Below are positions 951 to 50,385 of a DNA stretch of 64,000 nucleotides, piece after piece. The notes beneath the pieces were generated by a model, which saw only the letters and a program-made list of their open reading frames with translations, was not told where the DNA came from and searched no databases. The stretch lies in IMG/VR virus record IMGVR_UViG_3300032562_000004, positions 171,813 to 235,812 of that record; one strand, given 5' to 3'. Each line of letters begins with the position of its first letter. Position 1 is the stretch's first letter. The translations under genes were made by a program, and so were the position numbers.

Positions 951-1292
951 CTGTTATTTTCTGTTTCGACGGATAACTCCGCAAAGCAGTGATTAAACTG
1001 CTAATGTTTGGCGTTGTGCTGTACGAGCAGAGAAACGAATTCCCTTACCTGAAACAGTTACTTCGCCTTTAGATGCGTTTGCATTTAAGTTTTTCGCTTG
1101 ATTTACAGTCATCGCCTACTGTGTTGCCTCTTTCATTATCTCACCATGTCGAAACCTTGTCATCCCCACTGAAACATACTACAGCTTTTGGCCTCGCTAC
1201 CGATAACTCGGTTCGGTAATATGCTTCGGTGGAGATGCCGGGAATCGAACCCGGGTCCACAGCGCCTTCACTACGAAGGAATTACAACAATT
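951..1292 (-). ncRNA. ssrA: Circularly permuted (two-piece) tmRNA: acceptor piece ~1292..1228, intervening segment 1227..1168, coding piece 1167..~951
   Basis: T-arm plus 3' acceptor strand GGACCCGGGTTCGATTCCCGG-CATCTCC-ACC precedes the 5' strand GGGGATG-ACAAGGTTTCGAC. The 7-bp acceptor stem has G3.U70. A resume context AAACTTAAAT-GCA-AAC is followed by a tag ORF. Confidence 0.9.
993..1082 (-). other. tmRNA tag reading frame ANASKGEVTVSGKGIRFSARTAQRQTLAV*
   Basis: Resume codon GCA at 1082..1080, 29 sense codons, TAA at 995..993. Confidence 0.8.
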
Positions 1293-1294
1293 CT

Positions 1295-1498
1295 TTACAG
1301 CGGAAGAATATTTGATGCTTGCTTGCCTTTAGGGCCTGCCACTACATCGAATGTTACCGCTTGATTCTCTTTTAAACTCTTAAAACCATTTGTGCTAATT
1401 GCGGAAAAATGTGCAAACAATTCCTCACCACCAGCATCGGGGGTAATAAATCCAAACCCTTTTGCATCATTAAACCACTTTACTTTACCTGTTGCCAT
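1295..1498 (-). CDS. cspA: Cold-shock protein (CSD)
   Basis: [18 protein letters not shown] (RNP1) and LFAHFSAI (RNP2), 67 aa. Confidence 0.97.
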
Positions 1499-1555: not shown

Positions 1556-1742
1556 CCAATTTGATATAAACAAGCGTAGCGTGATACTTAATATATCTAA
1601 CCACTCTAAAACTCAAATGAGCATTAGTAGGTATATTTAGTATTGATCGGTTCCGAATTGCTGGCAATGGACCACAACCTAATCTGCTCCACTCTTCTTC
1701 AGAGTAATAATACTGTTCAACTGGTTTTTTGTTCTGTTCCAT
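1527..1742 (-). CDS. Hypothetical protein
   Basis: 71-aa ORF preceded by a TAAATA motif. Confidence 0.55.
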   Translation of the reverse strand: MEQNKKPVEQYYYSEEEWSRLGCGPLPAIRNRSILNIPTNAHLSFRVVRYIKYHATLVYIKLVDKIGKIVV

Positions 1743-1784: not shown

Positions 1785-1860
1785 TGGTGGTCCGGGTAGG
1801 ACTTGCACCCACACTCCCCGAATTATGAGTTCGACGCTTTACTTTTTAAGCTACCGGGCC
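1785..1860 (-). tRNA. tRNA with CAU anticodon, probably Ile2 (lysidine type) rather than Met
   Basis: GGCCCGG...TCGAA-CTCATAA-TTCGG...GTGGG-TGCAAGT-CCTAC-CCGGACC-A-CCA, 76 nt with encoded CCA. C4-G69/C5-G68 pairs favour Ile2. Confidence 0.88.
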
Positions 1861-2265: not shown

Positions 2266-2553
2266 TCAAGGATATACTTTTTCGCCTTGCTTGAGTAACA
2301 CTACGCTAAACTTATCAGTTTTGAATTGTGTGTTGAGTTTTTTGGCAAGATTGATTGCGTGACCTGGATTACTAAAACTTACTTTTTTATATTTAGGTCC
2401 AGGGTACTGAACTAATAAATTAGAAGTTTTAAGATTAACTGGTTTATTATCAAAGTAAACGGCCCATACTCCTTCCGAAGCAAGTACTTGCTCGGTTTTG
2501 TATGTTTGCTTGTTTGTAAGCTCAGCTAAAATGGTTGGCTTGGGGCGACTCAC
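2266..2553 (-). CDS. Hypothetical phage protein (MSRPKPT...)
   Basis: 95-aa ORF, GTG start overlapping the upstream stop (GTGA). Confidence 0.75.
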   Translation of the reverse strand: MSRPKPTILAELTNKQTYKTEQVLASEGVWAVYFDNKPVNLKTSNLLVQYPGPKYKKVSFSNPGHAINLAKKLNTQFKTDKFSVVLLKQGEKVYP

Positions 2554-3152
2554 TTAGAATTCCTTTTGAATAGTTCTTTTCGTGCTTCAGATATTTTTTT
2601 ACAAGTTTCTGGAGAACGCTTTTTACCTTTGTGGAGCAACGATATTTTTTGTTTGAATTCCTCACTTCGTGGAACCATTATTTGTTTAGCTCTAGCATCT
2701 TTTATTTTTTGTTTTGTTTCGTCACTATGCTTTTTTCCTAACATAGTAGGCGCTTGTTTTGCTCTAGCAGTTCGAATCTTTTCTTTACTAGACTCTGTAT
2801 GTCTATAGTTTTTACTATTTTCTCTAATTTTTTGTCTAGTGGACTCTTTTACAGTACCGTAACTACCTCCCATTAATCCATCTTCGGGTTTAATGTTAGC
2901 CCATTCTGCTGACTCGACAATTTTGTTTTCTGTAGAAAATTTTAAAGCGTATTCGACTAATGTTTCTTTATTATCGAATAGCTGACACCAAACGGTAGTA
3001 ACATCTAGACCGTGTTTATTAAGATGTGCCCGCCAGTGTACGCCAGATCCTAAATATTTGTTAGGATCCCGTATAGTTTTTCCAAAGTATTTTAGACCGG
3101 TAGTATTATGTTGCTTAATGTACAACCAGGTAGGTTTAAACGGTTTCGACAT
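2550..3152 (-). mobile_element. Free-standing GIY-YIG homing endonuclease with NUMOD3-type repeats
   Basis: WLYIKQHNTTGLKYFGKT...YLGSG..W N-terminus, ANIKPEDG, and repeats HTESSKEKIR / HSDETKQKIK / RSEEFKQKIS. Confidence 0.85.
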
Positions 3153-3403: not shown

Positions 3404-3774
3404 TGTTCTCTCTTTAAAAAGTTAGCTAGCTTAGGTGGTTCCCATCCCAATGGTTTAAGAATTTTACCATCTTCACGACGGCGTACTTTGCCCAGTTGAC
3501 GGTCAATTTTGGCAAAGTTAGTAGCCATTACCTCACGCCAAGCACCTTCACCATCTGCGCCCATCGAATTGATTGCTCCGATAGTAACGACAATAATATC
3601 GATTAAAGCATCAAGAGTTTCAACTTGATTTTTATTAGCAATAGCTACTTGTAGCTCGTCGTATTCTTCTGTAATCAATTTGGAGTAAAGTCTAAACTGA
3701 TCATCATTCATGCCTGAGATAGTCTGCTCGCAAGCTGTCATAAATTTTGCTGAATCCTTAAACGGGTTTGTCAT
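3400..3774 (-). CDS. MazG-like/all-alpha NTP pyrophosphohydrolase
   Basis: EEYDEL...ETLDALIDIIVV...SNFAK-like and GKILKP motifs. Start moved to ATG 3774 (MTNPFKD), which overlaps the upstream stop. Confidence 0.8.
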   Translation of the reverse strand: MTNPFKDSAKFMTACEQTISGMNDDQFRLYSKLITEEYDELQVAIANKNQVETLDALIDIIVVTIGAINSMGADGEGAWREVMATNFAKIDRQLGKVRRREDGKILKPLGWEPPKLANFLKREH

Positions 3775-4391
3775 ACTTTTTCCTTTTTCTTTAATTGTGC
3801 GTTGCGTCTTGCTTCGGACCAAGGCTTACCTTTATGCTGTGATCCATAAATCTTTTTTCTCTCTTCTTCTGTAAGAGAACTTCTATGTTGTAATGCCTTT
3901 TCTTGCATCACTACTTTTGTATCTTCTGAATGTTCTTTATCTCTAAACGGATTATTTTCCTTCATCCATTCTCTGTGTTTTTCTTTTCTTCTCTTTGCTT
4001 CTTCTTTATCCTGTTGTATCTCTTCGTAAGTCTTGCCTTTGTTTTTACCTGGCTTACCTCTGCTGGCATTGCCTATTTTAGTTTTTGCTTCTTCGGTATG
4101 ACTAAACGGACCACCATCGCCTGCTTCTGGTTTTAAGTTAGCCCACTCTGGACTATCTACTACCTGCCATAAGTCACTGTAGTACAGGCCCCAGGCTCTT
4201 ATTTCTTCATTATCTTTACACTCTTTTAATATTTCTGTATCAACATCATTGCCGTGTTTCTCGATATGAGCTGACCAACGCTTACCAGAACCTTTGTAAG
4301 TGTACGGATCTTGATTAGTCTTACCTAAATATTTTAATCCGGTTTTACGATGAGTTTTAATGTACAAGTAAATCATATTGTACTTAGTCAT
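3771..4391 (-). mobile_element. Free-standing GIY-YIG homing endonuclease
   Basis: YLYIKTHRKTGLKYLGKT..DPYTYKGSG, WANLKPEAGDGG, NUMOD3-like HTEEAKTKI / HSEDTK. Confidence 0.85.
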
Positions 4392-4585: not shown

Positions 4586-5031
4586 TTAGGTAGTGCCTCT
4601 TCTTTAGTTTGAAATGGACCCTCGTAAGGGTAGCGTTGTAATACAATTAATTTAGGATCTTGCATAGCCGCCCAATGACGACCTTTCTTGACTGTGTACC
4701 AACCAGCCGCATACCAAGATTTACTTTTCTTTGTTTTAGTGTAAACTGGTAGCTTTTGTGGAACGTCCCACATAGGATTATATACACGACCTGCTGCCGG
4801 AAAGCCATGTACTATATTGGTTGTTTTCTTTTTCTCAGGTTTAATAATAGCTTCAAAAGTAACATTGATATTTCGTTCAACTAATTTAATACTTTTGTAT
4901 TGTGCTACTACTTGATTATTAATCTTAACTTGATAGCCGCCATCGCAGGCTTCAATGTTCCCTACTTTATTATTATTTTCTTGTAAAATCCAAAACTGTT
5001 TATCTATTACGGGTTTAGCTACTAGACTCAT
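4582..5031 (-). CDS. Hypothetical phage protein
   Basis: 149-aa ORF in operon. Confidence 0.7.
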   Translation of the reverse strand: MSLVAKPVIDKQFWILQENNNKVGNIEACDGGYQVKINNQVVAQYKSIKLVERNINVTFEAIIKPEKKKTTNIVHGFPAAGRVYNPMWDVPQKLPVYTKTKKSKSWYAAGWYTVKKGRHWAAMQDPKLIVLQRYPYEGPFQTKEEALPK

Positions 5032-5228
5032 TTAGTCATCCTTTTTCTACATTGTTCTTTTACTGCTACAGGATAGTCGGGACTAATCTCTGCGATACCA
5101 CAATCATACTTTACTGTTACATGGCGTACATCTGCGGGCCAAAATGCTAAGGCTAATATAGTTAACAATACAGCAAATGTTACCGTAGTCCAAAACATAT
5201 CTTTAGCCATATTATTCTTCAACTCCAA
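5028..5228 (-). CDS. Small membrane protein
   Basis: Hydrophobic segment FWTTVTFAVLLTILALAFW. Confidence 0.6.
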   Translation of the reverse strand: MELKNNMAKDMFWTTVTFAVLLTILALAFWPADVRHVTVKYDCGIAEISPDYPVAVKEQCRKRMTK

Positions 5229-5424
5229 AATGTTCTTTAATTACTCTGCCTACACCTAGAGTAATACCTTCGGCTTCTGAATTATGGTCATTGGCAACTT
5301 CGGCACATTCCTGAACAATCAACTCGGCGAACTTGGCTAAATCGTCGTGCGACATATTGCCATCGCTTAGATTATTATCAGTGATACCAGCCTGTTCAGC
5401 AAGTTGTTTAATCTTCTCGTTCAT
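5212..5424 (-). CDS. Hypothetical protein (MNEKIKQLAEQAG...)
   Basis: Internal ATG downstream of a TTGACC-N17-TACAAT promoter is more plausible than the track start at 5478. Confidence 0.65.
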   Translation of the reverse strand: MNEKIKQLAEQAGITDNNLSDGNMSHDDLAKFAELIVQECAEVANDHNSEAEGITLGVGRVIKEHFGVEE

Positions 5425-5527
5425 TGCTTTAATTCCCAAATTTAATTGTATGCTACTATTGTAACAGAATTTAACCATACGGTCAACTATTTTGGTAACC
5501 TAATAAAATTAACGAAAGATAAATATG

Positions 5528-5597
5528 AACTAAATAAGTGTAGTTCGCGATCCTGGCAGATCCAACTACTCTAACAGTTAAAAAGGAACTATTAGCA
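5528..5597 (+). promoter_or_regulatory. Late promoter plus conserved structured leader of homing endonuclease (copy 1)
   Basis: AACTAAATA-AGTGTAGTTCGC-GATC-CTGGCA-GATC-CAACTACTCTAAC...AAGGA; shared with 36961 and 31025. Confidence 0.8.
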
Positions 5598-6338
5598 ATG
5601 ACTATTTACACGCTTTACATTAAGACGCATAAGAAAACAGGACTAAAATATTTAGGTCAAACTCATTACGATCCCTATGAATACAAAGGTTCGGGGATTG
5701 ATTGGAAAAAACATATTAAACAGTATGGAGACGATATTACTACTCAAGTTATTTATTCCGGAAAAAATCGTAATGAAATGTCGTCCTTGGGCAGATATTA
5801 CAGCAACCTATACCGCATTACAACTTCTGTGGATGATTTTGGCAACAGAATTTGGGCTAACAGAACTATAGAAAACGGTGGAGGCGGATGGAACATAGGT
5901 AAAACATACTCTACAGAAGAACGAAAAAAGTTTGGGCATACTAAGCATAAGGGTTCTAAACGAACAGATAAACAAAAACAAAAAATGAAGGATAATCACG
6001 CAGATTTTTCTGGTAGCAATAATCCTAACTATGGCAAAAAAGCAAAAGATTCAACACTTACAAAAATGAGAGTCTCAAAAGTAAGAGTATGTCGCATAGT
6101 TGATCGCAAAGAAATGTCTGTAAACGAACTTACTGGCTGGATTAAGCGAGGCTGTAATCTAAAAGACAACTATCGACATGATCCTACTATCTATTCATTT
6201 ACTAACCTAATAACTAACGAAACTATTACTGCTACTAAACGAGAAATGATTGAACGATACAATCTAGATCAAAGTGCTATGAGTAGAGTATTAACCAGAA
6301 AGTTAAAATCTACTAAGGGATGGTCTTTAACTTTGTAG
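5598..6338 (+). mobile_element. Free-standing GIY-YIG homing endonuclease, antisense to flanking genes
   Basis: TLYIKTHKKTGLKYLGQT..DPYEYKGSG, WANRTIENGGG, GSNNPNYGK and a C-terminal HTH-like tail; overlaps the RNase H 3' end. Confidence 0.85.
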
Positions 6339-7328
6339 TGATCCAGTGTAGTGCTTATTAAGCCAATCACCAAATGTTGCTGCGTTTTCGCTTACCTTTG
6401 TAAGTTCGTAACGCCCACAAAATTTAAGGAAGTGACTACCAACTTGTCCTACATCCTTGTGACTAATTTGTTCCTTAATAGTATCATCTACTACTTCTTT
6501 AACATCATCTGGTTGCGCTGTTAAATCTACTAATGCTACATTACGCTGATAATCGTCCAACACACGATGTTCTACACCATCTGGATCCGTCCAGCGTTGT
6601 AGCATCATATTGTTCCAATTATATCCCTTTTTGTCCTTGTCAGCGAATGCCTCCACAAGGCCAACCTTGTTTTTAGTGCCCTTTGTTCTGACACCGGGAA
6701 ATGCCGAAAAGACATTGTCGCTCGAATCGCCGCGCATACATTTCTCAAAAAGTAACCACTGTGGATCCGGTATTGTTTTTGGTTCTTTAGTTTTCTTGTC
6801 GATGACTGGTCTACCTTTGGCATCAAAGATTCCTTCTATAGTATGTAATTCGTCGGTAATTCCGTTATACTGCTTGACATTTTGTGCTAATAATTGAACA
6901 AAGTCAGTATCACTGCTGATAATAACGTGTTCATCTTGTGGATGTAATGCGATCCAACGAGCTATAATATCATCCCCTTCTGCTGTTGGGCAACGGATAA
7001 CACTACAGTTTGTTTTCTCTGACAAGTATTTAGTCAAGGAATCATAGGTTTCCCAGAACATCTTATCTTCTTCTTGTTCTGCTTCTGTAAGCGCAGCTCT
7101 AGATACAGCACGATTAGCCTTATATGGTTTGTAGAAGTCTTTGCGCCAACTGCGCCCTTCTAAAGCAAATACCACATGATCCGCCTCAAATCGACGAGCC
7201 ATTTTGTTAGCGGCCATTAATGTTACATGGAGGGCAAATCCTACCTTTTCCCAAGTATCACTAGCACGAAAGGCTCCATGTCTAGCACGAAAGAAAAGAT
7301 TAGCGGTATCTATAAGAACATATTTCAT
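6327..7328 (-). CDS. rnh: T4 RNase H-like 5'-3' exonuclease (FEN family)
   Basis: LIDTANLFFR, EGDDII, ISSDTDFVQL, GDSSDNV motifs. Confidence 0.9.
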   Translation of the reverse strand: MKYVLIDTANLFFRARHGAFRASDTWEKVGFALHVTLMAANKMARRFEADHVVFALEGRSWRKDFYKPYKANRAVSRAALTEAEQEEDKMFWETYDSLTKYLSEKTNCSVIRCPTAEGDDIIARWIALHPQDEHVIISSDTDFVQLLAQNVKQYNGITDELHTIEGIFDAKGRPVIDKKTKEPKTIPDPQWLLFEKCMRGDSSDNVFSAFPGVRTKGTKNKVGLVEAFADKDKKGYNWNNMMLQRWTDPDGVEHRVLDDYQRNVALVDLTAQPDDVKEVVDDTIKEQISHKDVGQVGSHFLKFCGRYELTKVSENAATFGDWLNKHYTGSLQS

Positions 7329-7334
7329 ACAAAC

Positions 7335-7363
7335 AGTATAGCAGAACTTATATTAAAAGTCAA
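7335..7363 (-). promoter_or_regulatory. sigma70-type promoter for rnh
   Basis: TTGACT-N17-TATACT just before the ATG; no SD visible. Confidence 0.7.
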
Positions 7364-7902
7364 ACGAAATTGTTGGTAATAATGTAATTTAGGAGTAAAC
7401 GGTTCCAAAAAGAATGCCCGTCTTTACCAAAATGCTTAGAATTTGGGGATACCGTTTCGATATTGGCATTACGAATTTTATCTTCGTAAGTATCTGATAT
7501 AAAGCTATTGTTCCAATCGTGTTGGATGTTAAAAGATTGGCTACTGTTAAAAAATATATGTTTAATATTTTGGTTGGCTAATTCCAAATGAAATTGCCAA
7601 ATTTTTCCTTCATCTTCAGCAGTAGCAGGCCATTGGATAATAACTAAAACATCCTGCTTTTTCTCGTCTAACCATTTTTTTGTTGCGGCTATAATATCAT
7701 CGGTGGTATTATCAACATACGCTTCGCAATGAAAACTATAACGAAGGGCTAGACTTAACATCTTGCCCCAACTGATTGCTATATTATCAGGATGCGGTAG
7801 TTGGCCTAAATGAGCTATTCTTGCGTCATCGCCGGCAACAATATATTGATTTACAGCTTCGGCGGCTGTGGTGTGACTATCACCGTTTACATATAATATC
7901 AT
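7360..7902 (-). CDS. Hypothetical, SGNH/GDSL-like
   Basis: N-terminal LYVNGDS and C-terminal HFGKDGH resemble SGNH blocks I and V. Confidence 0.5.
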   Translation of the reverse strand: MILYVNGDSHTTAAEAVNQYIVAGDDARIAHLGQLPHPDNIAISWGKMLSLALRYSFHCEAYVDNTTDDIIAATKKWLDEKKQDVLVIIQWPATAEDEGKIWQFHLELANQNIKHIFFNSSQSFNIQHDWNNSFISDTYEDKIRNANIETVSPNSKHFGKDGHSFWNRLLLNYIITNNFV

Positions 7903-8372: not shown

Positions 8373-8734
8373 CTTACTTCACTCCTGCCATCGCCAACAT
8401 CGCGACTTTTAACTACTCGCGGCGACATTGCTTCGTATTGTTCTGCTGTTTCTAATACTACATTACGACATACTGCGGTAAACCAACGATCAATAATATC
8501 TGCGTCTGTATCTTTAGGATCCATCATATAGCCATGGCGAACCAAATCGGCAATCATTTTGTCATTCCAATCAAATTCAAATGCGCCTGAATTAATATCG
8601 TTAGGATCTATGTCCATACTTAATACTTCAAAGTATGCTTCGCCTTTTTCAGTAGCAACTTGTTTAGCTGACTTAGCTTGTTGTTGCGCTACAGCCGCAA
8701 TTGGCTTCTTTTTAAAAAAATCAAATATTCCCAT
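8369..8734 (-). CDS. Hypothetical phage protein
   Basis: 121-aa ORF. Confidence 0.7.
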   Translation of the reverse strand: MGIFDFFKKKPIAAVAQQQAKSAKQVATEKGEAYFEVLSMDIDPNDINSGAFEFDWNDKMIADLVRHGYMMDPKDTDADIIDRWFTAVCRNVVLETAEQYEAMSPRVVKSRDVGDGRSEVS

Positions 8735-9837
8735 TACTGATCCTTAAACAAATTTATTTCTTCCCATGGCAAATCTTTTTTGCCAAAGTGACCATAGTTA
8801 GTAGTCTTACTGTATATAGGTCTAAACAGCTTAAAGCGATTAATAATACCTAACGGAGTTAAATCTACATTATTATAAATCCACTCTGTTAACGCACGAC
8901 TATCACCGTCTGACTCTATATAAAAACTCATAGGTTGTGCTACCCCAATAGCATAACTAATTTGTACAGTAGCCCAGTTAGCACGACCAGCGGCAACAAT
9001 ATTCTTAGCCAAATAGCGAGCCATGTAAGCGGCGCTACGGTCTACCTTAGTAGGATCCTTGCCACTAAACGCACCACCGCCGTGTGGGCTATATCCACCG
9101 TATGTGTCTACAATAATCTTACGACCTGTTAATCCTGTGTCACCATCAGGACCACCTACTACAAAACGCCCTGTTGGGTTAATATAAAATTCTGTCTTTT
9201 CATCTACAAATTCTGTAGGTAATATATTACGAATAATATTGCCAACGTCTTTACGAACAGTTTCGATATCAACATCGGCATTATGTTGTGTAGAACAAAC
9301 TACTTTAGCAATACGAATAGGTTTGGCATCATCGCTGTATTCAAAAGTAACTTGACTCTTAGCATCTGGTCCAAGATAGTTAAGTACACCTTGTTTACGA
9401 ACTTGTGTTAACCCTTCTACAATTCTATGACTCCAGTAAATTGCCGAAGGCATAAAGTTTTCTGTTTCGTTACAAGCATATCCAAACATTAATCCTTGGT
9501 CGCCTGCGCCAAAGTTGTCTGTGCCTAACGCAATATCTGCGGACTGGCCATGTAGCAAGTTAATAATTTTAACAGTACGCCAATCAAATCCTGACTGCTC
9601 GTAACCAATATCTTTGATGACTCGACGAATAGCTGATTCTACTTCTTCTGAATGTAATACACCTTTATATTCTCCAGCAACAATTACTGTATCTGTAGTT
9701 ACCAATGTTTCACAAGCACAACGAAGACTAGTGTCTTCTTTACTCATTACTAAATCTAAAATAGCATCACTAATAGCATCTGCTACTTTGTCTGGATGTC
9801 CTTCTGATACTGATTCGCTTGTGAATAGATAGCTCAT
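8734..9837 (-). CDS. metK: S-adenosylmethionine synthetase
   Basis: FTSESVSEGHPDK, GAGDQG, GGGAFSGKDPTKVDRS signatures; start at MSYLFTSES (9837). Confidence 0.98.
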   Translation of the reverse strand: MSYLFTSESVSEGHPDKVADAISDAILDLVMSKEDTSLRCACETLVTTDTVIVAGEYKGVLHSEEVESAIRRVIKDIGYEQSGFDWRTVKIINLLHGQSADIALGTDNFGAGDQGLMFGYACNETENFMPSAIYWSHRIVEGLTQVRKQGVLNYLGPDAKSQVTFEYSDDAKPIRIAKVVCSTQHNADVDIETVRKDVGNIIRNILPTEFVDEKTEFYINPTGRFVVGGPDGDTGLTGRKIIVDTYGGYSPHGGGAFSGKDPTKVDRSAAYMARYLAKNIVAAGRANWATVQISYAIGVAQPMSFYIESDGDSRALTEWIYNNVDLTPLGIINRFKLFRPIYSKTTNYGHFGKKDLPWEEINLFKDQ

Positions 9838-10079
9838 TAATTTCCTTTTAATTTCCATATAAGATGTTCGGTACTGCTATGCCATTTGTATTGATACGCT
9901 GGTTCGCCTGGCCCGGACCATCCAGCTACGCCACGATAGGCATATTCTAGCCAGATTAACTTATTACTTAGCGCACATTTATGGGGTAGCCAAGAAAATT
10001 TGAGTTCCCAAAATGCCTTTCTATAAAAAGGATCGATTAAATCAGGTATAGGCATACCATGAAATCCTTGTGGATACAA
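9837..10079 (-). CDS. Hypothetical protein
   Basis: 80-aa ORF. Confidence 0.55.
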   Translation of the reverse strand: MYPQGFHGMPIPDLIDPFYRKAFWELKFSWLPHKCALSNKLIWLEYAYRGVAGWSGPGEPAYQYKWHSSTEHLIWKLKGN

Positions 10080-30558: not shown

Positions 30559-30819
30559 TTATAGTGTTTTGCCCACTTGAGTTAAAATTTGTTCTAGCAA
30601 GCTATGGTCATCTTGTGTACGGCCAAATTCAGCTTTGTGAGCAATCTTAATAGCTTTTTTAAGGATAGCTGGTTTAATTTCTAATTCTTCAGCAATAGCT
30701 TTAACTGTGTCATTCAATCCACCTTGTAGTGTTTCGATTTCCATAGTAACAGCCATACCTTCATTGATAATTTGCTCTAATTTTTTAGTTTGTTCTGCTG
30801 TGAATACGCGGTCTGACAT
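30559..30819 (-). CDS. Small DNA-binding protein (DsbA/GapR-like)
   Basis: 86-aa helical protein, ...VKAIAEELEIKPAILKKAIKIAHK. Confidence 0.55.
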   Translation of the reverse strand: MSDRVFTAEQTKKLEQIINEGMAVTMEIETLQGGLNDTVKAIAEELEIKPAILKKAIKIAHKAEFGRTQDDHSLLEQILTQVGKTL

Positions 30820-30846
30820 TTAGTTCTCCTGTTAATAATGTTACAA

Positions 30847-30875
30847 GTATACAGGATATTTTGGATGAAGTCAAA
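30847..30875 (-). promoter_or_regulatory. sigma70-type promoter
   Basis: TTGACT-TCATCCAAAATATCCTG-TATACT. Confidence 0.75.
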
Positions 30876-30879
30876 TGAT

Positions 30880-30975
30880 AAAAGACACTTTTGGCTAAAC
30901 GGTAGCGAATCGCTTTACCAAGGCAGGCTCCGCCTACACCGGCCGTTTTACAACGGTCCTAAGGGTGTTCTTTAC
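30880..30975 (-). ncRNA. Candidate multi-stem ncRNA driven by a late promoter
   Basis: Closing stem AAAGAACAC/GTGTCTTT with three internal hairpins; GC-rich island in AT-rich DNA; TAAATA at 30988..30983. Confidence 0.55.
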
Positions 30976-31072
30976 ATATAAGTATTTACCGAAGTACAGT
31001 TTTCAAAATGCCAACGATTCATAGCATTAGAGTAGTTGGATATCCCCATATCGCGAACTACACTTTTATTTA
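30972..31072 (-). pseudogene. Homing-endonuclease relic: conserved leader (copy 3) fused to C-terminal MNRWHFENC
   Basis: TAAATAAAAGTGTAGTTCGC-GATAT-GGGG-ATATC-CAACTACTCTAATGCT followed by ATG AAT CGT TGG CAT TTT GAA AAC TGT. Confidence 0.75.
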
Positions 31073-31153
31073 TCTATAGATAACAGGTGCGTAAGGATTA
31101 AGTTTATAATCCTCATCACCGTGTTGTTCTGGATAAACTGGATATTCGTTCAT
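31070..31153 (-). CDS. 27-aa peptide MNEYPVYPEQHGDEDYKLNPYAPVIYR
   Basis: Manual translation; preceded by TAAATA. Confidence 0.5.
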   Translation of the reverse strand: MNEYPVYPEQHGDEDYKLNPYAPVIYR

Positions 31154-35409: not shown

Positions 35410-36486
35410 CTATTTTTCTTCTATGTAATCAGCCGATTGCTCAGCGTCATGTTTGGCTTTACGACGAGCCATATACATTTCTAATGCTATTTCACATTCT
35501 TCTAAACTGCTAAAACGACTTGGTAATTCTTTGCCAGCACGTTTGATACAAAAGCCATTGCGCTCATCGCCGTGGATCTCAACTAATACAGAGCCGCCGC
35601 CACCTGAGCCAATGCCAACATCCTCGACTGGAACATTAACTGTTTTAACTGGAGCTGTTGCGCTTTCTGCGTATGTAGGATCAGTTAACCCAGCAGGCGC
35701 TTCGCCTTGTGCCGGAGTTTGATTTGGATCTTCGTCCAACTCATTTTCGTGTTCGCCGTATTCGTCGGCATCTTCATCATCGGCGTATTGATTGTATTCA
35801 ACATTAGCAGCATTAAAACTGTGTGTTCCGTGATTGTATAAATTTACAATTATAAAATTACTGCGTTGTCCAAAATCAACAATTTCGCCAGTAGCGCCGC
35901 TAAACTGTACATCGCCAATAATTTCAACTGGGTCACCAATTCGTAATTCTTGACCTTCTTCTAAACTATCAGGGATAGCTTCTTCTACATCTTGTTCTTT
36001 TTTCTTTGCTAACTCAGCACGAGTTTGTTGTGCTAACTTGTTGCCTACGCCTGTGCCTTGTTTGTTGAAGCCCGGAGGATTGCGAAACGGTTTAGCCGGA
36101 GCCGGTGTGTATGGTGCGTCGGGATCTTGATCAGCTTCGTCGACTGATTCTTTAGACTGTAGTTCTAAATCTTTTAATTCTTTTTTCTTTAAGTCTAAGT
36201 CTTGTTTTTTCTTAGTAATTAAATCTTTGTCTTGTTTGAGTGAATCTTCTGCTGATTTTAAATAATCAACTAAACTTGCTTTAACTTTTGATAGTACATC
36301 GTCTGACTTCTCTTCGGCAAACTCAACACCACCGACACCAGGAGTAAAATCCTCTTCGGCTTTTTTTAAATTATTAAAGAGTGCTGGTTTCTTCTGTTTA
36401 GATTCAGCAATATGCTCATGCTTAGGAGCTATGCGCCCCTCAAGTATGGCTAATTTTTCTACAATACTATAAAAGTTATGGTCCAT
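35410..36486 (-). CDS. Acidic mosaic protein, probably virion-internal
   Basis: LEG/FAEE/VDEA/VEEA/LEEG/LDED/YAES linkers; KOW-like LRIGDPVEIIG...GATGEIVD. Confidence 0.65.
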   Translation of the reverse strand: MDHNFYSIVEKLAILEGRIAPKHEHIAESKQKKPALFNNLKKAEEDFTPGVGGVEFAEEKSDDVLSKVKASLVDYLKSAEDSLKQDKDLITKKKQDLDLKKKELKDLELQSKESVDEADQDPDAPYTPAPAKPFRNPPGFNKQGTGVGNKLAQQTRAELAKKKEQDVEEAIPDSLEEGQELRIGDPVEIIGDVQFSGATGEIVDFGQRSNFIIVNLYNHGTHSFNAANVEYNQYADDEDADEYGEHENELDEDPNQTPAQGEAPAGLTDPTYAESATAPVKTVNVPVEDVGIGSGGGGSVLVEIHGDERNGFCIKRAGKELPSRFSSLEECEIALEMYMARRKAKHDAEQSADYIEEK

Positions 36487-36926
36487 TATGCTCTAGCTTC
36501 TTTCAAAAAACTTTGTAGCATCCAGATAAACTTGTTTGTGGCAGTTAATCTTTCAGCGATAAAATTTGCGATATCTTGCTTGTTCTCTGCTGTAGCAGCC
36601 GCAAAACATTCATTAAGAAGGTTGATCATAACATGGGAATCAGCTAGTAATTCCTCAAGCATGAGTTGTGCTCTAGGCACTTTAGTTTGGTCTTGAATAC
36701 GGGATAACTCGTTATAACGAGTAAGGCTAGCAGGAGTGTATTCTCCCAGGGTGCGGATAAACTCCCCGAGCGGGTCAACGGCAGAATATGCGTCCTCATA
36801 CACTTTTTGTAGGAATTTATGATATTGATAGAAGTCTTTGCCTTCTACATTAAAATGAAAGAAATGGGCTTTTAAGTAATAAGCGAAGTCACTCGCGAGT
36901 AAAATTTTCATCAATTCAGCCAGCAT
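36486..36926 (-). CDS. dps: Dps/ferritin-like DNA-protection protein
   Basis: HFFHFNVEGKDFYQYHKFLQKVYED...D..GE.IR...WML. Confidence 0.88.
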   Translation of the reverse strand: MLAELMKILLASDFAYYLKAHFFHFNVEGKDFYQYHKFLQKVYEDAYSAVDPLGEFIRTLGEYTPASLTRYNELSRIQDQTKVPRAQLMLEELLADSHVMINLLNECFAAATAENKQDIANFIAERLTATNKFIWMLQSFLKEARA

Positions 36927-36948: not shown

Positions 36949-36969
36949 TTATTTAGTTAAAACTAAATA
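36949..36969. promoter_or_regulatory. Back-to-back TAAATA late promoters (inverted repeat)
   Basis: TATTTAGTT-AA-AACTAAATA serves dps (minus) and the HNH gene (plus). Confidence 0.65.
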
Positions 36970-37031
36970 GAAGTGTAGTTCGCGGATCTCGACAATCCCA
37001 ACTACTCTAACGCTTATAAGGAGCAATCAGC
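36961..37031 (+). promoter_or_regulatory. Late promoter plus conserved structured leader of homing endonuclease (copy 2)
   Basis: AACTAAATAGAAGTGTAGTTCGC-GGAT-CTCGACA-ATCC-CAACTACTCTAAC...AAGGAG. Confidence 0.8.
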
Positions 37032-37613
37032 ATGAGTATTTACAGAAAAGATAGCTACCATCGTAAAATATACGAGGATCACTATGGGCCAATTCCAAAA
37101 GATTCAGAAGGTCGTAGCTACGAAATACATCATATAGACGGAAATCACGAAAATAACAACATTGATAATCTTCTCTGTGTAAGCATACAGGAACATTATA
37201 ATATACACTATTCTCAAGGAGATTTCAAGGCTTGCCTTATAATGTCTAAAAGAATGGACATTTCTCCGGAAGAAAAATCGAGGCTAGCAAAAATAACTAA
37301 CGCAGGCAAAAACAATCCAAGTTATGGGATTTATTGGTGGACTAATGGAGTTGAAGAAAAGAAATCAAAAACTCAACCGGGACCAGAATGGACTCGCGGA
37401 AGATCTGCTATATTAAAAACTCGTGTATCGTCTACTATAGTTAAAAAGGATATTCGAGCAGGGGCAAAAAATACAAGTTATGGAAAATATTGGTGGACTA
37501 ACGGAATAGATAGCATTAAATCAGATAAGTGCCCAGAGGGATATTACAGAGGGGTAGGAGAAATACAGAGAATGAAGTCAAGAAATAAGTTGGCTAAATC
37601 TTGGATTTTTTAG
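37032..37613 (+). mobile_element. Free-standing HNH homing endonuclease, antisense to flanking genes
   Basis: YEIHHIDGNHENNNIDNL...EHYNIH; two YG.YWWTNG repeats. Confidence 0.88.
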
Positions 37614-48994: not shown

Positions 48995-49789
48995 TTACTT
49001 CTTTTGTGCTTCTTTGATAAGATTGGTTAGTTCGTCACTTAGGCTAGATGGCATTTTGGCATGAATTCTAACTAATAAATCGCCAACAGGTCCTTGGCGT
49101 GAAGCTAGTCCTCTACCTTTCAGACGCAATAGTCCGCCTGGCTGTGTTAACGGTGGAATGGTTAAAGTTAATTGGTTACCCAAAATATCTTTTACTTCTG
49201 TTTCTCCGCCAACTAAACAATCCCAAATAGATACTTGCTGGTCCATTGTTAAGTTTAATCCTTGGCGATGCCATTTTGGATGTTGATGTATTCTAAAATT
49301 AACAATTAAATCTGTGTTACCAGGACCTATGCCAGGATATTGAATATTATCGCCATCGTTAAGTCCCAATGGGATTTCTATTTCAATTGTCATTGAGCCT
49401 TGCTGTGTACCTACAGTAACAGGCCGCTTGCCGCCTTGTGCTACATCTTGTAATGTTACCCATAAGCTCATTCTGGTATGGGTTTGTCGTTGCTGTCCTG
49501 GATGTTGATGCCCTGGATGAAACTGTGCGCCAAACATACTAAAGATATTGTTAAAATCGAACCCGCCACCATTAAATTCAAAATGTATATTTTGATTAGG
49601 ATTATCGTATTGGGCTCGTTTACTAGGATCGCTTAATGTTTCATAAGCCGACTGAACCGATTGAAATTTAGCTTTATCGCCACCTTCGCGGTCTGGATGA
49701 TACTTTGCCGCCATACGGCGATATGCTTTTTTAATATCGTCAGCAGACGCATTACGGTCTACTCCTAAGGTTTGATAGTGATCTGTCAT
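48995..49789 (-). CDS. dnaJ: DnaJ/CbpA-type co-chaperone (J-domain + C-terminal domain, no zinc finger)
   Basis: [10 protein letters not shown]...YHPD..GD...AYETLSD; LRLKGRG..GDLLV. Confidence 0.92.
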
Positions 49790-50385
49790 ATTGTAATAAA
49801 TGTGCAATTTTTTCGTATTAGATAGGGAGATAAATTTGTAGCCGCCATTGCTTCTCTAATAGAAGCATATTCAATACCATTAAGTAATAACGGTTTTGAG
49901 GCGGCGTTCTCTTTACCTGTCCTGTTGCCTTTTTGTTTTTGACTGCTCTTACGTTTTCTATCATTGGAACAAGGTATTCCATATAATGGATGATTACTAC
50001 CTTTCATTCGTTCGCTTTGTGCTGGATTCTTCTTACCGCCCCAGACACTTAGCTCACCGACGTATACACCTTTTAATGCTTTACTTCGTTTGGCTCGAAC
50101 TTCTGGAGATATATTACTTCCGCCTTCGCCGCCATCTGTTTGATTTGCTAATATGCCAGTACCGATGTCTTTGCGCCCAAACTTTTTAATAAGTTTTTTT
50201 TCGAGGTCAAACGCTTCCTCCTCAAATAAAGATTTGGCAATTATTATAATTCGATTTTTATCTGATGGTGGTTTATAAGTGCGTTTTTTTGACCATGCTC
50301 GATCACCGGACCCCTTACCTATGTAGTAAGGGGATTGCCCGTCTTTACGAAGATAAGCATAAACATAGAATTTTGGGTCAGTCAT
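49786..50385 (-). mobile_element. Free-standing GIY-YIG homing endonuclease
   Basis: FYVYAYLR...PYYIGKG...E...N.TDGGEG; NUMOD3-like tail; own TTTACA-N17-TATAAT promoter. Confidence 0.88.

What the first reader, a model, noticed from the sequence alone, without database searches (positions are those of the whole stretch)
5528..5600. Conserved, covarying RNA leader shared by unrelated homing endonucleases (three copies)
Seen: TAAATA-(N1-3)-AGTGTAGTTCGC-[hairpin]-CAACTACTCTAA occurs at 5528 (+, before a GIY-YIG gene), 36961 (+, before an HNH gene) and 31072 (-, orphan). The outer stem GTAGTT/AACTAC is invariant. The inner hairpin changes sequence but keeps pairing: GATC/GATC, GGAT/ATCC, GATAT/ATATC. 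In copy 1 a second stem CTAAcAGTT/AACTaTTAG encloses the AAGGA SD. Known: T4 endonuclease genes such as I-TevI are controlled by late promoters and RBS-sequestering hairpins. Inference: a portable RNA module that travels with nucleases of different folds. It could act as a translational switch, an RNA partner of the nuclease, or a recombination handle for domain shuffling.
Basis: partly seen in the sequence, partly recalled or inferred. Interest (0 to 1): 0.75.

Follow-up and report, generated by a model that had tools for sequence, protein, structure and literature searches.

The report
Two-hairpin control cassette of phage nucleases
A roughly 80-base cassette (late-promoter motif, two covarying hairpins, ribosome site, start codon) sits in front of many unrelated homing-nuclease genes in uncultured lake phages, and its base-pairing is kept on the strand opposite the nuclease gene, pointing to an undescribed antisense RNA rather than a folded mRNA leader.

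Summary
The three copies are exact (0 expected by chance). A covariance model finds two more in the same phage record.

The element is a widespread cassette, not a local repeat. Its order is NTAAATA, 3-5 nt, hairpin SL1, CTC, hairpin SL2 holding the Shine-Dalgarno site, CAGC, start codon, TATTTA. It precedes several different PHROG homing-endonuclease families. Rfam 15, 50,697 GenBank phages and the searchable literature gave no match.

Covariation is very strong. 15 of 18 pairs show double changes, and the score is 0.454 against 0.146±0.009 in shuffles.

The new finding concerns the strand. The same pairs are standard in 86.6% of cells on the nuclease strand but 99.5% on the opposite strand (143 A·C against 2 G·U). 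The selected fold is therefore antisense to the nuclease 5' end.

TATTTA is the complement of the promoter hexamer. It is conserved in three reading frames at a fixed distance from SL2.

Best reading (inferred): a cis-antisense RNA limits nuclease expression, in the manner of IS10 RNA-OUT. No RNA data were available. The "orphan" copy is a deletion relic of a nuclease gene.

The parts
5518..5536 (+). Copy 1: two overlapping late-promoter-like motifs, GATAAATA (5518-5525) and CTAAATA (5530-5536). The predicted start of the nuclease mRNA is at or near G5540.
   Evidence: Sequence. NTAAATA is present in 111/112 modules. CTAAATA recurs about 20-25 nt before the ribosome sites of many genes in this record. 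NATAAATA is the late promoter of T4-like cyanophages (PMC2984593). Promoter activity is inferred, not shown.
5540..5569 (.). Copy 1 SL1: outer stem GTAGTT/AACTAC, a G-C pair flanked by two bulged C, inner stem GATC/GATC, loop CTGGCA. It can fold on either strand; selection is on the - strand.
   Evidence: About 30 compensated outer-arm classes.
5572..5594 (.). Copy 1 SL2: TAACAGTT/AACTATTA enclosing the Shine-Dalgarno AAGGA (5583-5587). On the - strand this is a hairpin whose loop is the anti-SD sequence.
   Evidence: On the sense strand the mismatches in this helix are A·C only.
5598..6338 (+). Nuclease gene of copy 1 (246 aa; NUMOD3; GIY-YIG-like N-terminus MTIYTLYIKTHKKTGLKYLG). It is antisense to both neighbouring genes.
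5603..5608 (.). Copy 1 TATTTA hexamer in codons 2-4. This reads TAAATA on the - strand. It is a candidate antisense late promoter or a pairing partner of the forward hexamer.
36963..36969 (+). Copy 2 late-promoter-like CTAAATA.
36975..37005 (.). Copy 2 SL1 (GTAGTT CGC GGAT-loop-ATCC C AACTAC).
37008..37029 (.). Copy 2 SL2 (TAACGCT / AGC-A-ATCA) with the SD AAGGAG. It has A·C and C·A mismatches on the + strand, which are G·U on the - strand.
37032..37613 (+). HNH_3 nuclease gene of copy 2 (193 aa), antisense to its neighbours. Its TATTTA hexamer is at 37037-37042.
31027..31074 (-). Copy 3 ('orphan'): GATAAATA (31074-31067) and an intact SL1 (31061-31032), then CTCTAA. The SD, CAGC and TATTTA are lost.
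30972..31022 (-). A 16-codon relic ORF (MNRWHFENCTSVNTYM) after copy 3. It is the C-terminal remnant of a nuclease gene, so copy 3 is an internal-deletion scar.
   Evidence: tblastn of leader-associated nucleases matches their C-termini (L032 residues 164-180 of 188, E=6e-6).
1560..1647 (+). Copy 5: a degenerate module (TATAAAC in place of TAAATA, eroded stems) with no ORF behind it.
   Evidence: Covariance-model hit at E=5.4e-6, 35.4 bits; sequence; no nuclease remnant.

Best explanation
The element is the 5' control cassette of free-standing homing-endonuclease genes in a clade of uncultured freshwater T4-superfamily (jumbo) phages.

On the nuclease strand it supplies a T4-type late promoter (NTAAATA), whose start falls at the foot of SL1. 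It also supplies the Shine-Dalgarno site and the start codon.

The two covarying hairpins are maintained on the opposite strand. I propose that an RNA is made from that strand. It would either start at a second late-promoter hexamer (TATTTA, which reads TAAATA on the other strand, in codons 2-4) and stop at SL1' plus the U-rich complement of the forward promoter, giving about 75-80 nt, or it would be part of a longer transcript.

This RNA is fully complementary to the nuclease 5' UTR, SD and AUG. It would hold nuclease translation or mRNA stability down, as IS10 RNA-OUT does for transposase.

Shown: the anatomy, the distribution, the covariation and the strand of the fold. Inferred: both promoters, the ends of the RNA, and repression.
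For: - Exact copies, not chance; five copies in the record.
They lie in front of several different PHROG homing-endonuclease families.
- Covariation: 15/18 pairs have double changes; score 0.454 against 0.146±0.009 (0/500 shuffles); slid controls 0.04-0.11.
- Strand: standard pairs in 86.6% of cells (sense) against 99.5% (antisense), with 143 A·C against 2 G·U. By class, the outer stem shows 14 A·C against 1 G·U, and the middle pair 7 A·C against 1 G·T. SL2 positions 2-4 show 144 A·C against 0 G·U.
- Energy: antisense MFE is lower in 59/67 modules. Alifold gives -22.0 (antisense) against -14.8 (sense).
- TATTTA is present in 101/112 modules that were not selected for it. It lies 4-6 nt from CAGC while the ATG sits 0, 1 or 2 nt before it, so it is a nucleotide-level constraint.
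- Both hexamers lie 5-7 nt from a hairpin foot.
- 72/106 cassettes face away from the upstream neighbour, so the nuclease needs its own promoter.
- Precedents: CfrI, an antisense RNA to a homing-endonuclease gene in phage S-PM2 (PMC2984593); late-promoter control of T4 nucleases (PMC2988022).
Against: - No transcript data: no RNA run was listed.
- The base next to the reverse hexamer is not promoter-like where coding leaves it free (C18, T7, G6, A4).
- The only recurrent hexamer variant, TACTTA, is the one that keeps a G·U pair with the forward hexamer on the antisense strand. That favours a closing helix over a promoter.
- The simple terminator scan did not flag SL1'.
- SL1 also folds well on the sense strand (93.9% of cells paired), so a sense-strand role is not excluded.
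- A G-to-A mutation bias on the sense strand could add to the A·C excess.
- Proteins behind other CTAAATA motifs could not be shown to be late genes.
Confidence: 0.45

Rival explanations
1. Sense-strand mRNA leader. SL1 is a 5'-terminal stabiliser hairpin of the late nuclease mRNA. SL2, and/or a three-way junction closed by TAAATA:UAUUUA in read-through transcripts, restricts translation to late transcripts. This is the classical I-TevI / mobE / T4 gene e switch.
For: - The predicted late start falls at the first base of SL1 (the spacing between TAAATA and the stem is 3-5 nt).
- SL1 pairs in 93.9% of cells on the sense strand.
- The SD lies in SL2 and the AUG lies 0-2 nt before UAUUUA, which is complementary to the promoter hexamer.
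- The closing helix appears in the MFE of 33/67 sense folds.
- This mechanism is documented for T4-type nucleases (PMC2988022). Hairpins with TATAAATA were reported upstream of metagenomic GIY-YIG and Vsr-like nucleases (PMC2677866).
Against: - 143 A·C against 2 G·U cells. SL2 position 2 is A·C in 94/95 modules.
- Sense SL2 is weak, mean -2.6 kcal/mol.
- SL2 is retained in late transcripts, so it cannot be the element they lose.
- Most cassettes are antisense to their neighbours, where no sense read-through is expected.
- The flanks of the hexamers do not covary.
Confidence: 0.2
2. Host-strand insulator. On the strand of the neighbouring phage genes, SL1' plus the U-rich tract acts as an intrinsic terminator or processing site, often followed by a sigma-70-type promoter. 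This would be a PeSL-like terminator/promoter joint that lets an antisense-inserted nuclease gene sit inside an operon. It would double as a homology patch for cassette shuffling.
For: - The fold is selected on the strand that is the coding strand of the neighbours in most loci.
- SL1' is followed by ACUUUUAUUUAU.
- 40/189 modules have a TTGACA-like -35 box 5-14 nt beyond it, 29 of them with a -10 box. At copy 1 a TTGACC-17-TACAAT promoter lies at 5486-5458 on the - strand.
- PeSLs are documented as recombination joints in T4-type phages (PMC2839356, PMC4122927).
- The same leader precedes unrelated nucleases.
Against: - It explains neither SL2' nor the frame-independent TATTTA at fixed spacing.
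- The sigma-70-like box is present in only about 21% of modules.
- A third of cassettes are co-oriented with their neighbours.
- The terminator scan was negative.
- The element occurs essentially only with nucleases, not between ordinary genes.
Confidence: 0.2
3. DNA-level element. Strand-specific single-stranded DNA hairpins, or a cruciform flanked by the inverted hexamers TAAATA/TATTTA, would be used in recombination-dependent replication or in copying the cassette during homing.
For: - G·T mismatches are also tolerated in DNA hairpins, so the strand asymmetry does not by itself prove an RNA.
- The hexamers are inverted repeats and are strictly conserved even at synonymous sites.
- The deletion relic at copy 3 has its junction inside the module.
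Against: - No known homing mechanism uses such hairpins.
- The unrelated nucleases would not share a DNA site.
- The promoter-to-hairpin spacing and the anti-SD loop fit transcription-level logic better.
Confidence: 0.07

Closest known systems
Late-promoter / RBS-sequestering hairpins of T4-type homing endonuclease genes (I-TevI, I-TevII, I-TevIII, segB, Aeh1 mobE; PMC2988022)
   Same: A T4-type late promoter lies immediately upstream of a nuclease ORF. An RNA structure surrounds the SD/AUG. The logic is to keep a potentially harmful nuclease at a low level and expressed late.
   Different: The known hairpins are idiosyncratic to each gene and fold in the mRNA, and the late start lies inside the hairpin. 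Here one conserved two-hairpin module serves many nuclease families, both hairpins lie downstream of the predicted start, and pairing is maintained on the opposite strand.
Conserved 5' hairpins with TATAAATA upstream of GIY-YIG and Vsr-like free-standing endonucleases in marine 'fractured genes' (Dassa et al. 2009, PMC2677866)
   Same: This is metagenomic phage DNA. Hairpins with two mutually complementary conserved motifs and a late-promoter box are shared by endonucleases of different families, and one locus keeps the hairpin after losing the nuclease.
   Different: Their motif sequences could not be retrieved, so identity is untested. Their nucleases are co-oriented inside split host genes. 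They reported neither a second hairpin, nor a frame-independent hexamer, nor antisense-strand selection.
IS10 RNA-OUT / RNA-IN and other cis-antisense controls of mobile-element or toxic genes (hok/sok, P22 sar); own knowledge
   Same: Face-to-face promoters with a short overlap covering the SD and AUG of a nuclease or transposase. The antisense RNA is a stable stem-loop RNA.
   Different: Nothing here has been shown experimentally. Both promoters would be phage late promoters. There are two hairpins rather than one. No sequence relationship exists.
CfrI antisense RNA of cyanophage S-PM2 (PMC2984593)
   Same: An antisense RNA in a T4-like phage that runs opposite a homing-endonuclease gene.
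   Different: CfrI is about 225 nt, links the nuclease gene to psbA, is a single locus, and has no reported conserved covarying fold.
PeSL promoter/stem-loop cassettes of T4-type phages (PMC2839356, PMC4122927)
   Same: Short repeated promoter-plus-stem-loop units found at the borders of variable genes and proposed as recombination joints.
   Different: PeSLs carry early sigma-70 promoters, have a single simple stem-loop, and flank ORFans rather than nucleases. They include no SD/ATG.

Membership tests
Any Rfam 15 family | Covariance-model score at or above the family's gathering threshold | tested here: not met
   Whole window at gathering threshold: only tmRNA and tRNA. Region 5490-5630 at E<=10: DUF2815 at 16.4 bits (gathering 41.2) and RT-18 at 12.6 bits (gathering 41.3), which are chance-level hits.
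I-TevI/mobE-type translational hairpin | Late promoter immediately upstream of the nuclease ORF | tested here: met
   NTAAATA in 111/112 modules, 3-5 nt before SL1. This is motif evidence only.
I-TevI/mobE-type translational hairpin | The hairpin that sequesters the SD has its 5' arm upstream of the late start, so late transcripts lack it | tested here: not met
   SL2, which holds the SD, lies wholly downstream of the predicted start. The only arm upstream of the start is TAAATA, which pairs with UAUUUA after the AUG and not with the SD.
I-TevI/mobE-type translational hairpin | Pairing maintained in the mRNA (sense) strand | tested here: not met
   86.6% of cells paired on the sense strand against 99.5% antisense; 143 A·C against 2 G·U.
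cis-antisense regulatory RNA (RNA-OUT / Sok type) | Conserved secondary structure on the strand opposite the target's 5' end | tested here: met
cis-antisense regulatory RNA (RNA-OUT / Sok type) | Own promoter on the opposite strand, inside or just after the target's start | tested here: inconclusive
   TATTTA (TAAATA on the other strand) is 90% conserved in three frames at fixed spacing, and synonymous T-to-C changes are absent. However, the adjacent base is not promoter-like, and the TACTTA variant fits a helix better.
cis-antisense regulatory RNA (RNA-OUT / Sok type) | Defined 3' end (terminator) | tested here: inconclusive
   SL1' is followed by ACUUUUAUUUAU, but it was not flagged by the consensus terminator scan, which cannot handle bulged stems.
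cis-antisense regulatory RNA (RNA-OUT / Sok type) | The RNA is expressed and represses its target | not testable with these tools
   No RNA run was listed for this phage.
PeSL | Early sigma-70 promoter as an integral part of the repeated unit | tested here: not met
   A -35-like box at a fixed offset on the antisense strand occurs in only 40/189 modules. The conserved promoter motif is of the late type.
PeSL | Repeated unit at the borders of exchanged genes | tested here: inconclusive
   The same module precedes several different nuclease families at many genomic sites. Exchange breakpoints were not mapped, because the syntenic comparison with L108 was uninformative.

The most novel reading that the evidence does not exclude
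The cassette encodes a new family of phage cis-antisense RNAs. Its helices change sequence very fast while keeping their pairing: about 30 outer-stem classes, 72 inner hairpins among the 115 canonical modules, and 95 SL2 variants among 112, all between nearly invariant linkers. These helices would act as specificity codes. Each nuclease gene would be silenced by its own antisense RNA. Resident copies, including nuclease-less relics such as copy 3, could silence incoming nucleases that carry the same code during co-infection. That would amount to an RNA-based immunity and competition system among homing endonucleases.
Probability: 0.12. Interest if true: 0.9.

Novelty: new variant of a known kind. 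Interest (0 to 1): 0.72.

Why it matters
Homing endonucleases are the main selfish elements of T4-type phages, and how their expression is restrained is known for only a handful of genes, each with its own hairpin. Here a single regulatory module with strong covariation is shared by several nuclease families across hundreds of uncultured lake-phage loci. Its fold lies on the antisense strand.

If an antisense RNA is confirmed, four things follow:
- It would be the first conserved RNA family dedicated to homing-endonuclease control.
- It would be a ready entry for Rfam.
- It would serve as a marker for finding free-standing nucleases in metagenomes.
- It would offer a testable explanation of how unrelated nucleases are swapped behind one leader, and of how phages tolerate nuclease genes inserted against the direction of their operons.

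Tried and rejected
- **GenBank phages.** Megablast and blastn of the locus and of a consensus-like module against 50,697 phages found no match.
- **Rfam.** Nothing at the gathering threshold or at the E-value threshold.
- **RNA-seq.** Two run searches found only lake DNA metagenomes, and no RNA run was listed.
- **Cassette borders from reads.** Laying contigs of four lake metagenomes on 4600-7400 to find nuclease-less alleles showed no clean allele. It showed only that the SL1 core is shared by many other contexts.
- **Cassette borders from synteny.** The comparison with L108 was not alignable in the intervening region.
- **Extension of the TAAATA:TATTTA helix.** The flanks do not covary (118 paired against 113±2.6 expected).
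- **Thermodynamic asymmetry of the isolated hairpins.** It is small for SL1 (-8.6 against -8.7 kcal/mol) and modest for SL2.
- **Ribozyme.** A hammerhead-like core was considered by eye on the antisense strand (CUGAUGC). I rejected it because that stretch is a covarying stem arm, and Rfam ribozyme models do not match.
- **RegA.** The Pfam model PF01818 found no match in the record, but the control genomes also gave none, so this is uninformative.
- **Late genes.** PHROG annotation of proteins behind other CTAAATA motifs, to prove they are late genes, gave no hits.
- **Loose re-parse.** A looser re-parse of all modules was noisy. I did not use it for the headline counts.

Full report
**1. The observation.**
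The three copies are in the sequence as described. The pattern AGTGTAGTTCGC-N8-30-CAACTACTCTAA matches at 5537-5574 (+), 36972-37010 (+) and 31027-31064 (-), and nowhere in 100 dinucleotide-preserving shuffles. Each copy is preceded by NTAAATA.

Copies 1 and 2 continue into a second hairpin around the Shine-Dalgarno site. They then reach the start codons of ORFs 5598-6338 and 37032-37613. The second ORF is an HNH_3 nuclease (Pfam E=3e-14). The first carries NUMOD3. Its nearest ESM-Atlas clusters are GIY-YIG/NUMOD3 proteins, although no HMM recognised the GIY-YIG domain itself.

**2. What the genome is.**
The window is part of a 158.5-kb IMG/VR record estimated to be 45% complete. Its DNA polymerase is 47-50% identical to those of Sinorhizobium phage Phosso and Agrobacterium phage Atu_ph07, and about 43% identical to Rak2-like E. 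coli jumbo phages. The sequence occurs in many lake-water metagenomes. 214 of 230 rough ORF calls lie on the - strand.

**3. More copies, and the orphan.**
A covariance model built from relatives finds two further copies in the record.
- One lies outside the window, in front of a third nuclease (PHROG 655). Its outer stem has changed from GTAGTT/AACTAC to GCCGAT/ACCGGC.
- The other is a decayed copy at window 1560-1647 with no ORF behind it.

The 'orphan' copy 3 keeps its promoter motif and SL1. These are joined to a 16-codon ORF (MNRWHFENC...) that matches the C-termini of leader-bearing nucleases (E=6e-6). It is therefore the scar of an internal deletion of a nuclease gene.

Four other nuclease-like genes in the record have no module. 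Three are in the window: 2550-3152, 3771-4391 and 49786-50385. The fourth lies outside it at G000 86073-86750. All four are co-oriented with their neighbours. All three intact module-bearing nuclease genes are antisense to their neighbours.

**4. Distribution.**
Nearly all share one architecture:
- NTAAATA, then 3-5 nt;
- SL1, made of a 6-bp outer stem, a G-C pair flanked by two bulged C, a roughly 4-bp inner stem and a loop;
- CTC;
- SL2, a 7-bp stem with the SD in its loop and 3' arm;
- CAGC, the start codon, and TATTTA.

A second scan anchored on SL2, and excluding the canonical base before CTCTAA, returned 116 more loci with other SL1 stems.

The flanking genes of these loci share 30-85% protein identity with genes of this record, so the loci come from one broad phage clade.

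The ORFs behind the module belong to different nuclease families. These include 'KTHNKTGLKYLG' and '[18 protein letters not shown]' GIY-YIG-like types, 'EKHHIIPRSLGG' and 'YEIHHIDGN' HNH types, and 'YLIGWTK...YGVRYAK'. They hit several different PHROGs.

Nothing similar was found in 50,697 GenBank phages, in Rfam 15, or as a text string in the searchable literature.

**5. Covariation.**
I tested the 18-pair structure on 61 diverse modules (alignment A3).
- 15 pairs show changes on both sides.
- The covariation score is 0.454, against 0.146±0.009 in 500 shuffles. None of the shuffles reached it.
- With the partners slid by 1-3 columns, the score is 0.04-0.11.
- About 30 distinct outer-stem arm pairs exist.
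- The 115 canonical modules hold 72 distinct inner hairpins, and 112 of them hold 95 distinct SL2 variants.

**6. The strand of the fold.**
Almost every cell that is not a Watson-Crick pair is A·C or C·A when read on the nuclease strand: 143 cells, against 2 G·T/T·G. On the complementary strand these become G·U wobbles. The same 18 pairs are standard in 86.6% of cells on the sense strand and 99.5% on the antisense strand.

The asymmetry holds helix by helix:
- Outer-stem classes: 14 A·C against 1 G·U.
- Middle pair: G-C 21, A-T 8, A·C 7, G·T 1.
- SL2 positions 2-4: 144 A·C against 0 G·U.

Energies agree. The antisense MFE is lower in 59 of 67 modules (-20.0 against -15.9 kcal/mol). RNAalifold gives -22.0 for the antisense consensus against -14.8 for the sense.

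By the usual criterion for assigning a structured RNA to a strand, the fold is selected on the strand opposite the nuclease gene. A G-to-A mutation bias could contribute. It would not explain why other mismatch types are virtually absent, nor why one A·C is fixed in 94 of 95 SL2 variants.

**7. The hexamer after the start codon.**
TATTTA is the reverse complement of the promoter hexamer. It is present in 101 of 112 modules that were not selected for it. It lies 5 nt (135 modules), 4 nt (20) or 6 nt (17) after CAGC. The start codon lies 2, 1 or 0 nt before it (113, 23 and 35 modules), so TATTTA is read in three different frames. In the main frame, codon 2 is always NNT and Ile is always ATT. 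This is a nucleotide-level constraint.

There are two readings.
- **(a) A second late promoter on the antisense strand.** Its start would fall 1-2 nt before SL2'. This mirrors the forward promoter, whose start falls at the foot of SL1. The transcript would end at SL1' plus ACUUUUAUUUAU.
- **(b) A closing helix TAAATA:UAUUUA of a three-way junction.**

For (a): conservation is strict even where a wobble would be tolerated. For (b): the only recurrent variant is TACTTA (5 cases), which keeps a G·U pair on the antisense strand, and the neighbouring base is not promoter-like where coding leaves it free. The flanks of the two hexamers do not covary. I cannot decide between the two readings.

**8. 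Context.**
72 of 106 cassettes have the upstream neighbour on the opposite strand. 50 of 91 have both neighbours opposite. This is unusual next to T4, where only segD is oriented like that (PMC2988022). It explains why the cassette must carry its own promoter.

In co-oriented cases the upstream ORF often stops in the TAA of the promoter motif.

CTAAATA, the form used by copies 1 and 2, recurs about 20-25 nt upstream of the ribosome sites of many genes of this record, often as TA[AG]CTAAATA. This resembles the NATAAATA late promoter of T4-like cyanophages (PMC2984593). I could not show that those genes are late genes.

In 40 of 189 modules a TTGACA-like -35 box lies 5-14 nt beyond the promoter complement on the antisense strand. 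At copy 1 a sigma-70-like promoter for the divergent gene lies at 5486-5458.

**9. Mechanism.**
Shown: a conserved, mobile, nuclease-associated cassette with a two-hairpin fold selected on the antisense strand.

Inferred (confidence about 0.45): an antisense RNA covering the nuclease 5' UTR, SD and AUG limits nuclease expression. The analogues are IS10 RNA-OUT and other cis-antisense controls of toxic or mobile genes (own knowledge). The precedent in a T4-like phage is CfrI (PMC2984593). On this view the sense-strand A·C mismatches keep the mRNA's ribosome site open while the antisense RNA stays folded.

Rivals:
- A sense leader of the I-TevI/mobE kind (0.2).
- A PeSL-like terminator/promoter insulator and recombination joint on the host strand (0.2).
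- A DNA-level hairpin element (0.07).

No RNA data could be obtained.

**10. Relation to what is known.**
Late promoters plus hairpins upstream of T4-type nucleases are established (PMC2988022). Dassa et al. (PMC2677866) reported conserved hairpins with TATAAATA shared by GIY-YIG and Vsr-like endonucleases in marine metagenomic loci, and a locus that kept the hairpin after losing the nuclease. That may be the same element or a sister of it.

As far as I could find, four points are not described elsewhere:
- the full two-hairpin architecture;
- its breadth across nuclease families and hundreds of freshwater loci;
- the frame-independent hexamer;
- the antisense-strand signature.

I file it as a new variant of a known kind: RNA-level control of mobile nuclease genes.

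Noticed in passing
window 1024-1330 (-) and 1785-1860 (-): The phage record encodes a tmRNA (Rfam beta_tmRNA at 117.6 bits and permuted tmRNA at 118.4 bits; ARAGORN reports a tag peptide) and a tRNA-Met. The degenerate fifth copy of the module (1560-1647) lies between them.
   Followed up: no
window 5258-5351 (inside ORF 5212-5478, - strand): In four lake metagenomes, contig depth over this roughly 90-nt stretch is 10-60 times that of its surroundings, and many joints skip 5241-5305 or 5334-5390. This points to a second short sequence shared by many genomic contexts or paralogues. It remains unexplained.
   Followed up: no
window 2550-3152 (-), 3771-4391 (-), 49786-50385 (-); G000 86073-86750 (-): Four further nuclease-like genes (the two tested carry NUMOD3) lack the module and are co-oriented with their neighbours. 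Two of them have sigma-70-like or CTAAATA motifs directly before the ATG. L108, a syntenic relative, lacks the 3771-4391 gene.
   Followed up: partly
whole record (for example G000 72197, 80558, 98664, 105912, 122712): A recurrent motif TA[AG]CTAAATA lies about 20-25 nt upstream of the ribosome sites of many genes. It is probably this phage's late-promoter consensus (C rather than A before TAAATA). The proteins behind it have no PHROG match.
   Followed up: partly
L046:127-214 and about 54 nt downstream: One module is followed not by a small nuclease but by a 558-aa ORF (MSEYYLNNQNLKATNVKIPW...). This may be a cassette relic now driving another gene.
   Followed up: no
loci (for example L010, L022, L031, L062): On the strand opposite the nuclease, a TTGACA-like -35 box sits at a nearly fixed 8-10 nt beyond the promoter complement in about a fifth of modules. 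This gives a PeSL-like 'stem-loop then early promoter' arrangement for the divergent neighbour.
   Followed up: partly
window 8734-9858 (-), 36486-36926 (-): The phage carries an S-adenosylmethionine-synthetase-like gene (GHPDK motif, identified by eye) and a ferritin/Dps-like gene (Pfam Ferritin, E=6.5e-17).
   Followed up: no
window 30820-30970 (-), downstream of the copy 3 relic: About 150 nt of non-coding sequence with G+C-rich hairpins (GGACCGTTGTAAAACGGCC, GTAGGCGGAGCCTGCC) and a further GTAAATA lies before gene 30559-30819. It may be a small structured RNA or a leader driven by the relic's promoter.
   Followed up: no
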